Source: Blepharisma stoltei ATCC 30299
Taxonomy: Eukaryota > Protista > Ciliophora
Direction: 5' to 3'
DNA length: 64,000 bases
NCBI GenBank assembly: GCA_965603825.1
Contig: CBFDEM010000023.1
Span: 62,001-126,000, forward strand
In this document: positions 6,805 through 10,671 of the stretch, in pieces
How positions within the stretch are numbered: the first letter of the stretch is position 1
Layout: each line of letters begins with the position of its first letter
Notes under the pieces: model-generated
Databases searched by the model: none
The model's input: only the letters and a program-made list of their open reading frames with translations
What the model was told of the DNA's origin: nothing
Translations under genes and position numbers: made by a program

Positions 6805-7653
6805 TTAATCCCTCATGACCTTCACATATTTCTTAAAGGCTTCTTCTATTTTTTTCACGTTCTTTCTGACTCGGCTCAGCTTTTGGATTCTCAATTTAAC
6901 TTTTTTTCCGTAGAAGGCCTCCATGATTCTGGTGTCCCATATTTTGGTGTCATTTCTGAAGCTTGGCTTAAGCTCTTCTTTGATAAAGTCGCAGTTAATC
7001 TCTTCTGAGTGTTCTTTATTTTCAGCTTCATTTAATGACAACTGAATTGCTCTTTTGACTTCTTCATCTTCGAAGTCGTCGTTGGCGTTGTAGCAAAAAT
7101 TTGAATTTTCTTCTCTTAGACAAATTTTGCTGAAGTTTCCAATCCCTAAGTTGCTGACGATCATATCTTCACAGTTTCGAAGAGAAGTGTTTTTTCCGAG
7201 AATCTCGATCTCTGTGCCAAATGTAGAAACTTGCAGCTTACTGCAGAGGAATTTTTTTAATTGGCCAAGTGAAATTTTATCTGAAACCCAAAATGAAGCT
7301 TTCGGTTCTTGAGTAATCGAGGAATTACCTTTAACAACCCAGACGTCAATTGATATGGGATTAATATCAGGCTTCCCCTCAATCAAAAAAACTTCGATTT
7401 CTGGGCCACCGCCGAACTGGCTGACTAAAGACCTTCACTCATTTTCGCTTACAATTACAAAGTCCTTGTTTTCTTCAATGCCTGAGCGGATTTTAAATTG
7501 TCTGATGTTATTTGTTGAATTTTTCACTAAGCTTTTATTATCAATTTGGTCAGGGCTGGTATTTAAATTTGAATAATGATCCCATCACTCTTTGCAAATC
7601 AAAAACTTGGTCAAGCCTGAATCATCTATATTTATGCTTGCGTTCCTATCCAT
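6805..7653 (-). CDS. DUSP-domain + ubiquitin-like + UIM protein with no USP catalytic domain
   Basis: With TGA=Trp the ORF extends to ATG 7653. FLICKEWW..Y/PDQIDN.SL/DFVIVS..EW..L...FGGGPEI is the DUSP signature; EDEEVKRAIQLSL is a UIM. Confidence 0.75.
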
Positions 7654-7661
7654 TTTATTAT

Positions 7662-9125
7662 CTAAAAAGCGTAAATTAGTCTTTTAAACAGATTTTTCCC
7701 TACTACTGGCAAAGCTTGGGCAAGGATATCTAAAACTATCTGCATTCCACGAGGATTGAGGTCAGTTACTTTATAGATTTGGCGATTTAGGGTAATTTTT
7801 GCATTTTGAATCACAAAAGAGGTTACATCAAGATTAGAAAAGTCCATTTCAGGATTTTTGGGGAGGGAATTAGTGGTAGGAGAAGAGCCTGAAAGTGATA
7901 AGAAGTTATGGGATTTATTGGAAATGGAGTCTTTTATTGGGACCCATAAGTAATTTTCAGGACAGAGAAGCTCGCTAGGGTGAAATTCCCCTTTATATCG
8001 CATTTTTTGGCAGGTATCGACGTAAAATCCCATATAGTAGTATTTGAAATTGCTTGATAAATGCTTTTGAATAAATTCTATTTCTTTTATAGCAGAGAAT
8101 ACACCTGGGGAGAGAAAAGTAATTTCAGGAGAGTAAAAGAAGTAGACCGCGGAAAGTCCTGATGGAAGAATATCAAGAACACTTACAGCTACTAAGCATC
8201 CGTCAATTTTATGAAGCATATGGAAGCTGCCTAAGCCGAAAGGGTATTCATTCGATGGTTGCTCTTTAACTAGCGAAGATTTGCATAGAAATCTTTCATA
8301 GCCTTTAGGATTAATTTCGTCAGGTTTATCTTTATGAACTGCAATTTGATATTCCCTATAAATTTCATAAGCTTCTTGAGAAAAATCGTCATTGACTAGT
8401 TCGTATTCATAAGTATGAGGATTTGTCTCTACATCTACACTCATTCGGGGATTTTCTGGGATTTTAATTTTCAAGATTCCTTCTTCGACTAAGTTAATAA
8501 ATCCTTTTTCTGCTGAAAATATTTTCCATTTCGAATTTTCTATTTCTTGCAAAAGATTGTTTTTCAAAATTTCATTAATTTCGTCCAAATTTCTTTCCTC
8601 CCCTTTTTGCTTAATTTTTGCATTTATTGCTAATGCAGAACTTATTGAGTAATTCCCAAATTTTGCTTCTCTATTTGGAGAATTTCTTTTAATTACACAC
8701 AATCCAACGGTGAACTGAACACCTAATGCATTAACAGTAGCCATGACTGCATTTTTTACTTTTTCGTAGAGTTCTTCAGGGACAATAAGCATTTCTTTAA
8801 TTGATTCACGCTTTTCTGCTTTATTGTTAGGTTTTTTGCTTAACCCTGATAAGTACCTTTGGAATTTTTTCGTAACTTTTCGCTGATTTTTATTGGGCTC
8901 ATAATTGCTTGCATCCATCCTTATCGTATTTAATTTGCAGCAAGATTTGCTTAAGTTTGGTTTATAATAGTAATTTCCACATCTTCTTCAGCCTTTAAGC
9001 ATAAGGTCTTCATAAACGTTGACTTTCATCTTTTCGCACACTAATCCGAAGCTAGCAGATTTTCCAGTTTTGCAGTATCCGCATTTATTGCCAGTTTGTT
9101 CGCCTATTAGGTTGACTAAGCTCAT
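7662..9125 (-). CDS. ATE1: Arginyl-tRNA--protein transferase 1 with inserted ArgRS N-terminal-like domain
   Basis: ATE_N motifs CGYC and GWRR.G.Y.YKP...SCC..TIR (W=TGA 8988-8990); ATE_C motifs YQIAVH, GSFH, AVSVLDILP.GLSAVY.FY.P and YYYMGFY...C.KM.YK. Confidence 0.93.
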
Positions 9126-9387
9126 CTAAATATGGAACTTTCTTTTTATAAATTCTGAATAATGAGAAAATGCATTGAAAATTTAGCGTCCAAACATAAG
9201 AATTAAAATTTATCGCTCTTTATCATATAAATTGAATTATTTTAATATAATGATTTTTATATATTTTATCTATATTTAAATAATTCCCAATTAAAAAACT
9301 TAATTTATAATTAATAAGCTCTAAAATCACTGTCATTAACTTATTATAAGAGAGCTAAAAAAATAAGATAGTTTTATTAAATAGGAA

Positions 9388-10671
9388 ATGGATGAGAATG
9401 GGTTAGAAAAATGCGTCTCATTCTTAAGAGATGCCCTGAATAAAAAGTCACCTGCACTTCGGAATGATGCTGTTCTATCTCAATTTATCGAAAAAATCTA
9501 TACTATGCTAGTTATAAGTGACATGGATTTGGTAGTAAAAATAAAACCAAATGGAAAACTTTGTATGTTTTGCAGCAAAATTATCAACGGAATTAACATT
9601 GGATCGGCTATAGGGCTCCAATGCAGCCCTTCTGAGCATTATTTCTGCAGTAAAAACTGCTTGAAAAAGCATGCACTATTATGCACAAAAAATACCTTAC
9701 TGGATTTAGAATATGTAAGATGCCCTTCATGTAGAGTCAGCATTAATATTGACCTAATTAGTGACGCTTTTGAGGGGCATATAGAAGATATCCAAAGAGA
9801 CGCCTGTGACCGAGCTTTAAAAGAGCTTTTAAATGAAGAAGAAAAAGAAAACCTGCAAGCCAAGTTTAACTGTGGAATTTGTTATGGGGAATTTAAAGTA
9901 GAAGAAAGCGTCACCCTTGAATGTGACCACAGGTTTTGTTTTCCCTGCATCAAAATGCATATGGAGCTACTCATAGAATCAGCCCAAGTAAGTGACGAAC
10001 ACCTAAGATGCCCGACCTGTGTCCAGCCACTGACTGCTTATGAAATTGAAGATATCGTAGGTCCTCAGCTTTACGAAAAATATGAAAAATTCCGATTAAG
10101 AGGCTTCAAGCTGTCAGCTGAAGAAGATGAAAATTCCATTTTGTTCCAATGCAGAGGGGTTGACTGTGAATATCTATGTATCATTGAAAAAGGAGTAGGA
10201 CAGTTTACATGCCCAAAATGCAATTATAAGTGCTGCCCTATGTGCAAAAAAGATATACACGATGGGATGACTTGTGAACAGTTTGAAAAATATTTGAAGG
10301 AAAATGATAAAGAAAGCAAAGCTTTTGAGCAGCTTTTAAGGAGAGAAGGGCTACTGAGGTGTCCAGTGTGTGGGGCGGTTGTGGAGAGAATTGATGGGTG
10401 CGAGTTTATGGTATGCTCGTCTAGTGAATGCCAAGGGATGACTTATTTTTGTTATAATTGTGGGAGGAAATTGGAAAGAGACCATGAGCCTCATAGATGC
10501 AAAGTAAGGGAGTTGCCAGAGAATCAGCGGAATATGTATAGAGCGAATGAGGATATGATTGCTGAGGTAGGGAGAAGAGGAATTAACCCACGCCAAAGAG
10601 AAAGAATAAACAGATTAGGGGTGCATGCAGATGGTGTTGAGAGATTGCTGGGACGGCCTGCTTGGCGATAA
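9388..10671 (+). CDS. RBR-type E3 ubiquitin ligase (extra N-terminal RING-like finger, RING1-IBR-RING2)
   Basis: CGIC..C.H.FC..C..CP.C RING1, IBR C..C..CP.C..C..C..H..C, RING2 CP.C...ERIDGC..M.C...FCY.C. Confidence 0.9.
   Translation: MDENGLEKCVSFLRDALNKKSPALRNDAVLSQFIEKIYTMLVISDMDLVVKIKPNGKLCMFCSKIINGINIGSAIGLQCSPSEHYFCSKNCLKKHALLCTKNTLLDLEYVRCPSCRVSINIDLISDAFEGHIEDIQRDACDRALKELLNEEEKENLQAKFNCGICYGEFKVEESVTLECDHRFCFPCIKMHMELLIESAQVSDEHLRCPTCVQPLTAYEIEDIVGPQLYEKYEKFRLRGFKLSAEEDENSILFQCRGVDCEYLCIIEKGVGQFTCPKCNYKCCPMCKKDIHDGMTCEQFEKYLKENDKESKAFEQLLRREGLLRCPVCGAVVERIDGCEFMVCSSSECQGMTYFCYNCGRKLERDHEPHRCKVRELPENQRNMYRANEDMIAEVGRRGINPRQRERINRLGVHADGVERLLGRPAWR

What the first reader, a model, noticed from the sequence alone, without database searches (positions are those of the whole stretch)
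8487..8771. ATE1 arginyltransferase carries an inserted arginyl-tRNA synthetase N-terminal (tRNA-Arg recognition)-like domain
Seen: between ATE_N and ATE_C lies ...AKFGNYSISSALAINAKIKQKGEERNLDEINEILKNNL...SAEKGFINL. Established: the ArgRS N-terminal domain (Arg_tRNA_synt_N/Add-1) has the pattern KFGDY..N.AM.I...LK....NP.EIA..I...L...AGPGFIN and binds the tRNA-Arg D-loop identity region. Motif order and spacing match across ~95 aa. Inference: this ATE1 has a synthetase-derived module for selecting or capturing Arg-tRNA-Arg, a design I do not know to be described. From memory, unverified, plant ATEs have a variable insertion in the same place that may be homologous.
Basis: partly seen in the sequence, partly recalled or inferred. 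Interest (0 to 1): 0.85.

Follow-up and report, generated by a model that had tools for sequence, protein, structure and literature searches.

The report
Synthetase domain inside arginyltransferase ATE1
ATE1, the enzyme that tags proteins with arginine for destruction, carries in this ciliate, and also in land plants, amoebae and other protists, a folded tRNA-recognition domain taken from arginyl-tRNA synthetase; it probably helps the enzyme pick the right tRNA, and it sits in a region the literature treats as disordered.

Summary
Window 9125-7662 (-) is an intact, intronless Blepharisma ATE1 (UGA=Trp). Residues 115-214 form an ArgRS N-terminal (Add1) domain: the model has pLDDT 95, its top seven structural matches are all ArgRS (Z 10.3), and profile-profile E is 9e-12. 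The single sequence stays just under Pfam's cut-off. The domain is not a Blepharisma oddity: 60 of 239 ATE1s carry it at the same site (ciliates, Heterolobosea, Amoebozoa, Rhodelphis, land plants). The sampled animals, fungi and one stramenopile-like clade lack it; animals have their known tRNA-binding loop there instead (0/60 vs 149, mutually exclusive). The Asn that reads tRNA-Arg A20 in ArgRS is the best-conserved column (24/26), and the window protein keeps 4 of 5 E. coli pocket residues. Most likely it binds the D-loop of Arg-tRNA-Arg; this is inferred, not shown. Against a strict A20 filter: two of four Blepharisma isoacceptors have U20. No description was found in ten open-access literature searches, which call the insert an IDR, but automatic Pfam calls already show the architecture in Acrasis and Rhodelphis. 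The scan noted the same on another piece of this genome (s1-646692, probably the paralog).

The parts
7662..9125 (-). ATE1 gene, 487 aa + TAG, intronless; TGA at 8990-8988 read as Trp46
   Evidence: whole-model VIA Z 29 to human ATE1 8tzv
8877..9083 (-). ATE_N: metal-binding Cys15, Cys18, Cys62, Cys63, and alphaC helix with Lys79/Lys83 (aligned to the human acceptor-stem-binding K88/K92)
   Evidence: PMC11283454
8784..8876 (-). end of alphaC, then basic, poorly conserved linker 1 with a predicted helix
8484..8783 (-). ArgRS Add1 (Arg_tRNA_synt_N)-type domain, residues 115-214
8649..8660 (-). F-G-N-Y motif (ArgRS FGDY); Phe156 = E. coli F36 of the A20 pocket
8493..8513 (-). last beta-hairpin, A-x-x-G-F-I-N: Ala205, Phe209, Asn211 = E. 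coli A78, F82, N84 (A20 stacking and H-bond residues); Asn211 is the best-conserved column of the domain across ATE1s
8418..8483 (-). flexible linker 2 (lowest pLDDT of the model; 9% mean identity among homologues)
7962..8375 (-). ATE_C / GNAT catalytic domain; His264, Asp318, Lys374, Tyr377 invariant among homologues

Best explanation
This is an ordinary, catalytically intact ATE1 whose loop between ATE_N and ATE_C holds a folded Add1 domain of arginyl-tRNA synthetase (shown: homology and predicted fold). It most likely entered ATE1 once, early in eukaryote evolution, and was lost or replaced in animals, fungi and a stramenopile-like clade (inferred from distribution and trees). Mechanism (inferred): the alphaC helix and GNAT fold hold the acceptor arm and Arg-CCA end, as in yeast and human ATE1. 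The Add1 domain, tethered on two flexible linkers, clamps the D-loop corner of the same tRNA; its beta-hairpin aromatic (Phe209) and Asn211 read nucleotide 20 as in ArgRS. This raises affinity for, and selectivity toward, Arg-tRNA-Arg (A20 species best). It is the folded counterpart of the animal alphaC-loop, which contacts the D- and T-arms from the same insertion site.
For: Fold and homology. An HMM built only from 69 ArgRS Add1 domains ranks 49 ATE1 inserts above the first reversed decoy, none of them animal or fungal. Four inserts pass Pfam's PF03485 cut-off clearly (P0131 49 bits, Rhodelphis 51, P0162 39, Acrasis 37). The A20-reading Asn is the most conserved of 96 columns (24/26 at <40% identity, 38/40 at <60%), with F/Y/H two residues before it in 25/26; E. 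coli pocket residues F36, Q40, A78, F82, N84 are from PMC8975779 and the window keeps four. Same insertion site as the human loop that contacts the D/T arms and whose deletion lowers RNA affinity 2-4 fold (PMC11283454); the two modules are mutually exclusive, 0/60 vs 149. Between the two Blepharisma paralogs the domain is 57% identical (GNAT 66%, linkers 18-19%). The tree with the 25 ATE1 domains held as one clade scores 7.5 lnL higher than the free tree (p-AU 0.63). Among the tRNAs sampled from this genome only tRNA-Arg(UCU) and (CCU) have A20.
Against: Blepharisma tRNA-Arg(ACG) and (UCG) have U20, and only one intact ArgRS was found to charge them, so Add1 with Asn evidently tolerates U20 here. 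F36 (9/26), Q40 (0/26; S/T) and A78 (5/26) are poorly kept across ATE1s. The Asn count is biased upward because the set was gathered with an Add1-seeded profile; five divergent ciliate inserts left outside the set, including Paramecium, lack the Asn. Yeast ATE1 works without the domain and an acceptor-arm mini-RNA suffices for arginylation (PMC10115844), so it cannot be essential for chemistry.
Confidence: 0.58

Rival explanations
1. The domain binds the tRNA elbow by shape and only adds affinity; it does not discriminate A20.
For: U20 in two of four Blepharisma isoacceptors; weak conservation of three of five pocket residues; His replaces Phe/Tyr in plants and many heterotrichs; an unchecked scan note reports an Add1-like domain on TrmO, a non-Arg tRNA enzyme, in this genome.
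Against: The Asn that makes the base-specific contact is the best-conserved residue, above all core positions. The TrmO claim could not be checked, and the ATE1-domain profile did not hit that locus.
Confidence: 0.25
2. The domain is a protein-interaction module, e.g. docking ATE1 on ArgRS or a synthetase complex to channel freshly charged tRNA, or mediating dimerisation or autoinhibition.
For: Human ATE1 is regulated by dimerisation (PMC11283454); in ArgRS, Add1 packs on other domains (established knowledge); net charge of the domain is neutral (14 K+R vs 13 D+E).
Against: The conserved residues are those of the RNA-contacting hairpin; the insertion site is the one used for tRNA contact in animals.
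Confidence: 0.1
3. A vestigial or purely structural insert, kept folded but without a ligand.
For: Lost at least three times; about 19% mean column identity across eukaryotes; degenerate in Paramecium-like ciliates.
Against: Retention across ciliates, Heterolobosea, Amoebozoa and Archaeplastida with a near-invariant Asn; in plants the Asn and G-H-x-N are invariant in 12/12.
Confidence: 0.07

Closest known systems
Eukaryotic ATE1 (PF04376 + PF04377; human 8tzv/8uau, yeast 7tif/8fzr/7wg1)
   Same: Same split-GNAT core (Z 29 to human), metal-binding cysteines, alphaC lysines and invariant catalytic-site residues.
   Different: The loop that is short in yeast and a disordered region with the alphaC-loop helix in animals is here a folded 100-residue Add1 domain. 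No solved ATE1 found in the PDB searches has it.
ArgRS N-terminal Add1 domain (PF03485; 4q2t, 5jld, 2zuf, 5b63)
   Same: Same alpha/beta fold (Z 10.3, rmsd 3.0 over 97 residues), FGDY-like and GFIN motifs, Phe/Asn pair of the A20 pocket.
   Different: Internal, not N-terminal; no Rossmann or anticodon-binding domain attached; GDYQ Gln replaced by Ser/Thr; it would engage already charged tRNA. Described as unique to ArgRS among synthetases (PMC3956977).
Animal ATE1 IDR / alphaC-loop (PMC11283454, PMC11370617)
   Same: Same insertion site; contacts D- and T-arms of tRNA-Arg, the role proposed here.
   Different: Not homologous (HHalign prob 0.07-0.18); disordered until bound. PMC11370617 extends the IDR label to plant and slime-mould ATE1, where the present data indicate an Add1 domain with flexible flanks.

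Membership tests
ATE1 arginyltransferase | ATE_N and ATE_C above Pfam cut-off | tested here: met
   42.2 and 137.7 bits vs cut-offs 27 and 25 on the piece after the TGA
ATE1 arginyltransferase | Metal ligands (CxxC, CC) and invariant His/Asp/Lys/Tyr of the GNAT site | tested here: met
   C15, C18, C62, C63, H264, D318, K374, Y377
ATE1 arginyltransferase | Transfers Arg from Arg-tRNA to N-terminal Asp/Glu | not testable with these tools
   needs an assay
Arg_tRNA_synt_N / Add1 domain | PF03485 gathering score 21.5 bits | tested here: not met
   Window domain 18.9 bits; orthologous inserts do pass: 49.3, 50.8, 38.5, 36.7, 22.1 bits. So it is an Add1 homologue, not a formal Pfam member by score.
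Arg_tRNA_synt_N / Add1 domain | Add1 fold | tested here: met
   AF2 pLDDT 95; VIA top 7 all ArgRS, Z up to 10.3; Atlas TM 0.74
Arg_tRNA_synt_N / Add1 domain | Tyr/Phe-x-Asn/Gln motif of the nucleotide-20 pocket | tested here: met
   Phe209-Ile-Asn211
Arg_tRNA_synt_N / Add1 domain | Full E. coli A20 pocket (F36, Q40, A78, F82, N84) | tested here: inconclusive
   4 of 5 in the window protein (Q40 is Ser); across ATE1s only the F82 and N84 positions are kept
Arg_tRNA_synt_N / Add1 domain | Binds the tRNA-Arg D-loop | not testable with these tools
   no co-folding or binding assay available
Arginyl-tRNA synthetase (whole enzyme) | Class I catalytic domain (PF00750) and DALR_1 | tested here: not met
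   absent from this protein; the genome's ArgRS is on G000:C40

The most novel reading that the evidence does not exclude
The ATE1 of the last eukaryotic common ancestor carried a synthetase-derived identity reader. Plant and most protist ATE1s still select their donor tRNA by A20, so arginylation (including plant oxygen sensing) depends on a tRNA identity element, and in Blepharisma only the A20 isoacceptors (UCU, CCU) feed arginylation while the U20 ones stay in translation. Animals replaced the domain with a disordered loop, and fungi lost it along with A20.
Probability: 0.3. Interest if true: 0.85.

Novelty: new variant of a known kind. Interest (0 to 1): 0.72.

Why it matters
How ATE1 picks Arg-tRNA-Arg from the tRNA pool is posed as an open question in the structural literature (PMC10115844), and the structures found are all from yeast or human, which lack this domain. 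If the domain works as in ArgRS, the form of the enzyme found in plants and most sampled protist groups uses a different and directly testable solution: one Asn and one tRNA base. It would revise the view that the plant and amoebal insert is an IDR, give a handle on plant ATE1/2 (hypoxia sensing through ERF-VII factors), and be a clear case of a synthetase identity domain reused outside aminoacylation.

Tried and rejected
(1) Chance motif match or assembly artefact: rejected (decoys, structure, unbroken contigs). (2) Blepharisma- or heterotrich-specific capture: rejected. (3) Archaeal/Asgard donor, suggested by the N-G-Y-I-N look: not supported; mean score of group profiles on 26 ATE1 domains was Asgard 10.8, other archaea 11.9, E. 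coli-type bacteria 10.6, other bacteria 15.7, eukaryotic cytosolic 15.7 bits. The donor is unresolved (92-column tree mostly open). No ATE_C above cut-off in 151 Asgard genomes searched. (4) Animal loop as a decayed Add1: no similarity. (5) Loss of the domain tracking loss of A20: fits fungi, fails for animals, and is unproven for stramenopiles, where only diatoms clearly lost A20 (PMC8975779) and only one of my nine sequences is named (Ochromonas). A lead only. (6) Dead ends: region-limited homologue search, Atlas feature search, prokaryote scan with the insert, plant profile alone vs PDB (no ArgRS hit), one lost script.

Full report
Locus. The window belongs to a 41.5-Mb, 64-contig genome that encodes, letter for letter, a protein named Blepharisma stoltei ATE1 on another contig (P0002 in L004), so it is almost certainly the B. 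stoltei macronuclear genome, where UGA is Trp. The gene runs 9125-7662 on the minus strand: 487 codons with one TGA inside the G-W-R-R motif that homologues read as Trp. Contigs from probable RNA runs cover 7653-9131 in one piece without gaps, and contigs of a second organism, about 90% alike, cover it too. The genome has two ATE1 genes, both with the insert. The piece after the TGA scores ATE_N and ATE_C above cut-off, and its model matches human ATE1 at Z 29. Metal ligands, the alphaC lysines that bind the acceptor stem in human ATE1 and the invariant GNAT residues are present.

Is the insert an Add1 domain? On its own the 95-aa stretch gives human ArgRS as best PDB hit (E=0.006) and PF03485 as only Pfam hit (E=0.0023, under the cut-off): suggestive but not sufficient. 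With 17 close homologues, 11 of 18 members hit PF03485 at a lenient E<=1 (best 2.9e-5), the profile hits human ArgRS at E=2e-6, and HHalign against 62 ArgRS Add1 domains gives E=8.9e-12. AlphaFold2 folds it with pLDDT 95.3. The seven best VIA matches among 48,161 chains are all ArgRS (Z 10.3, 9.8, 9.5, 8.9, 8.6, 8.5, 6.2); Foldseek and the Atlas agree. In the whole-protein model residues 61-178 again align to ArgRS 1-108 (Z 11.3). Homology is established.

How widespread? An HMM made only from ArgRS sequences ranks 49 ATE1 inserts ahead of the first reversed decoy, and none is animal or fungal. Iteration converges on 60 of 239 ATE1s with a sharp score gap to the rest (members score high partly by construction). 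Named carriers are Blepharisma, Naegleria fowleri, Acrasis kona, Cavostelium, Protostelium, Polysphondylium, Rhodelphis limneticus, a Nonionella library sequence and ten land plants; other ciliates are assigned by the tree only. Four carriers pass Pfam's cut-off clearly, and the databases' automatic annotation already lists ATE_N + Arg_tRNA_synt_N + ATE_C for them. The plant version is more diverged: HHalign E=1.6e-5 to Add1 and 7e-6 to the heterotrich insert; it was not folded here. A tree of the ATE1 core without the insert recovers ciliates, heteroloboseans, amoebozoan groups, plants, animals, several fungal groups and a clade around Ochromonas; the domain is missing in the last three and degenerate in Paramecium-like ciliates. 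The sample is uneven (mostly animals), the tree is unrooted and the deep forks are open, so early gain with losses is the simplest reading, not a demonstrated one. Holding all 25 ATE1 domains together as one clade is not rejected and scores better than the free tree. The donor ArgRS is unresolved; an archaeal donor is not favoured.

What does it do? [quoted passage not shown] The window protein has F156, S160, A205, F209, N211. Across 26 ATE1 domains under 40% identity the Asn is the best-conserved of 96 columns (24 N, 1 Q, 1 G) and the stacking position is F, H or Y in 25; the other three positions vary. Selection has therefore kept the base-reading hairpin rather than the whole pocket, with the caveat that the set was seeded by an Add1 profile and that five divergent ciliate inserts without the Asn fell outside it. 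[quoted passage not shown] In my set the animal loop motif (a rough pattern match) and Add1 never co-occur (149 vs 60) and are unrelated. The likely mechanism is two-point binding: the acceptor arm and Arg-CCA at alphaC/GNAT, the elbow at a tethered Add1. The first contact follows from yeast and human structures; the second is inference.

A complication. Among the tRNA genes retrieved from this genome, Arg(UCU, 4 copies) and Arg(CCU, 2) have A20, while Arg(ACG, 2) and Arg(UCG, 1) have U20; all other sampled tRNAs have U or C there (the search scored only the best candidates). Only one intact ArgRS was found. So either Add1 in this lineage tolerates U20, favouring the general-affinity rival, or ATE1 draws on a subset of isoacceptors, which is the most novel reading.

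What is known. Ten full-text searches of the open-access library found no paper linking ATE1 to an ArgRS domain (four of these were about A20). A plant review describes only a variable inter-domain sequence (PMC5452128), the Dictyostelium paper does not mention it, and PMC11370617 treats the insert of plants and slime mould as an IDR. Subscription journals, InterPro text and AlphaFold DB/TED were not searchable, so prior mention cannot be excluded.

Verdict. New variant of a known kind; interest 0.72.

Noticed in passing
L002 (G000:C4:176995-180249), minus strand, exons about L002:1779-1135 and 1131-298: A degenerate ArgRS paralog: Add1 (PF03485 24.6 bits) and DALR-like end are kept, 25% identical to the true ArgRS, but the HIGH motif reads E-L-F-H, the G-F-I-N motif is lost and the catalytic domain is shortened. 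A 15-nt GT..AG intron separates the two frames. Likely a pseudo-enzyme; exons compared separately.
   Followed up: partly
L143:1494-1566, L144, L012:1501-1572: tRNA-Arg(ACG) and tRNA-Arg(UCG) have U20 although the only intact ArgRS found is cytosolic-type with the Asn; an exception to the published rule that this type needs A20 (PMC8318970).
   Followed up: partly
L004 (G000:C27:262774-264244): Second ATE1 paralog (P0002), 53% identical, insert intact; its Cys-15-region reads C-I-Y-C and R-R-C-G reads R-R-W-G.
   Followed up: partly
window 9388-10671 (+) and 7653-6805 (-): ATE1 is flanked by two ubiquitin-system genes: a divergent RING-IBR-RING ligase, and, with its ATG nine bases after the ATE1 stop, a DUSP + ubiquitin-like + UIM protein. 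Probably chance in a dense genome.
   Followed up: partly
G000:C52:314611-314967: TrmO gene; a scan note (s1-638869) reports an Add1-like domain fused to it. Not hit by PF03485 or the ATE1-domain profile; the DNA could not be cut out.
   Followed up: no
P0020 (Cavostelium ATE1): Has an extra N-terminal CUE ubiquitin-binding domain.
   Followed up: no
P0092, P0143, P0145, P0151, P0021, P0053: Paramecium-like ciliate ATE1s keep a long insert but have lost the conserved Asn; worth comparing with their tRNA-Arg position 20.
   Followed up: no
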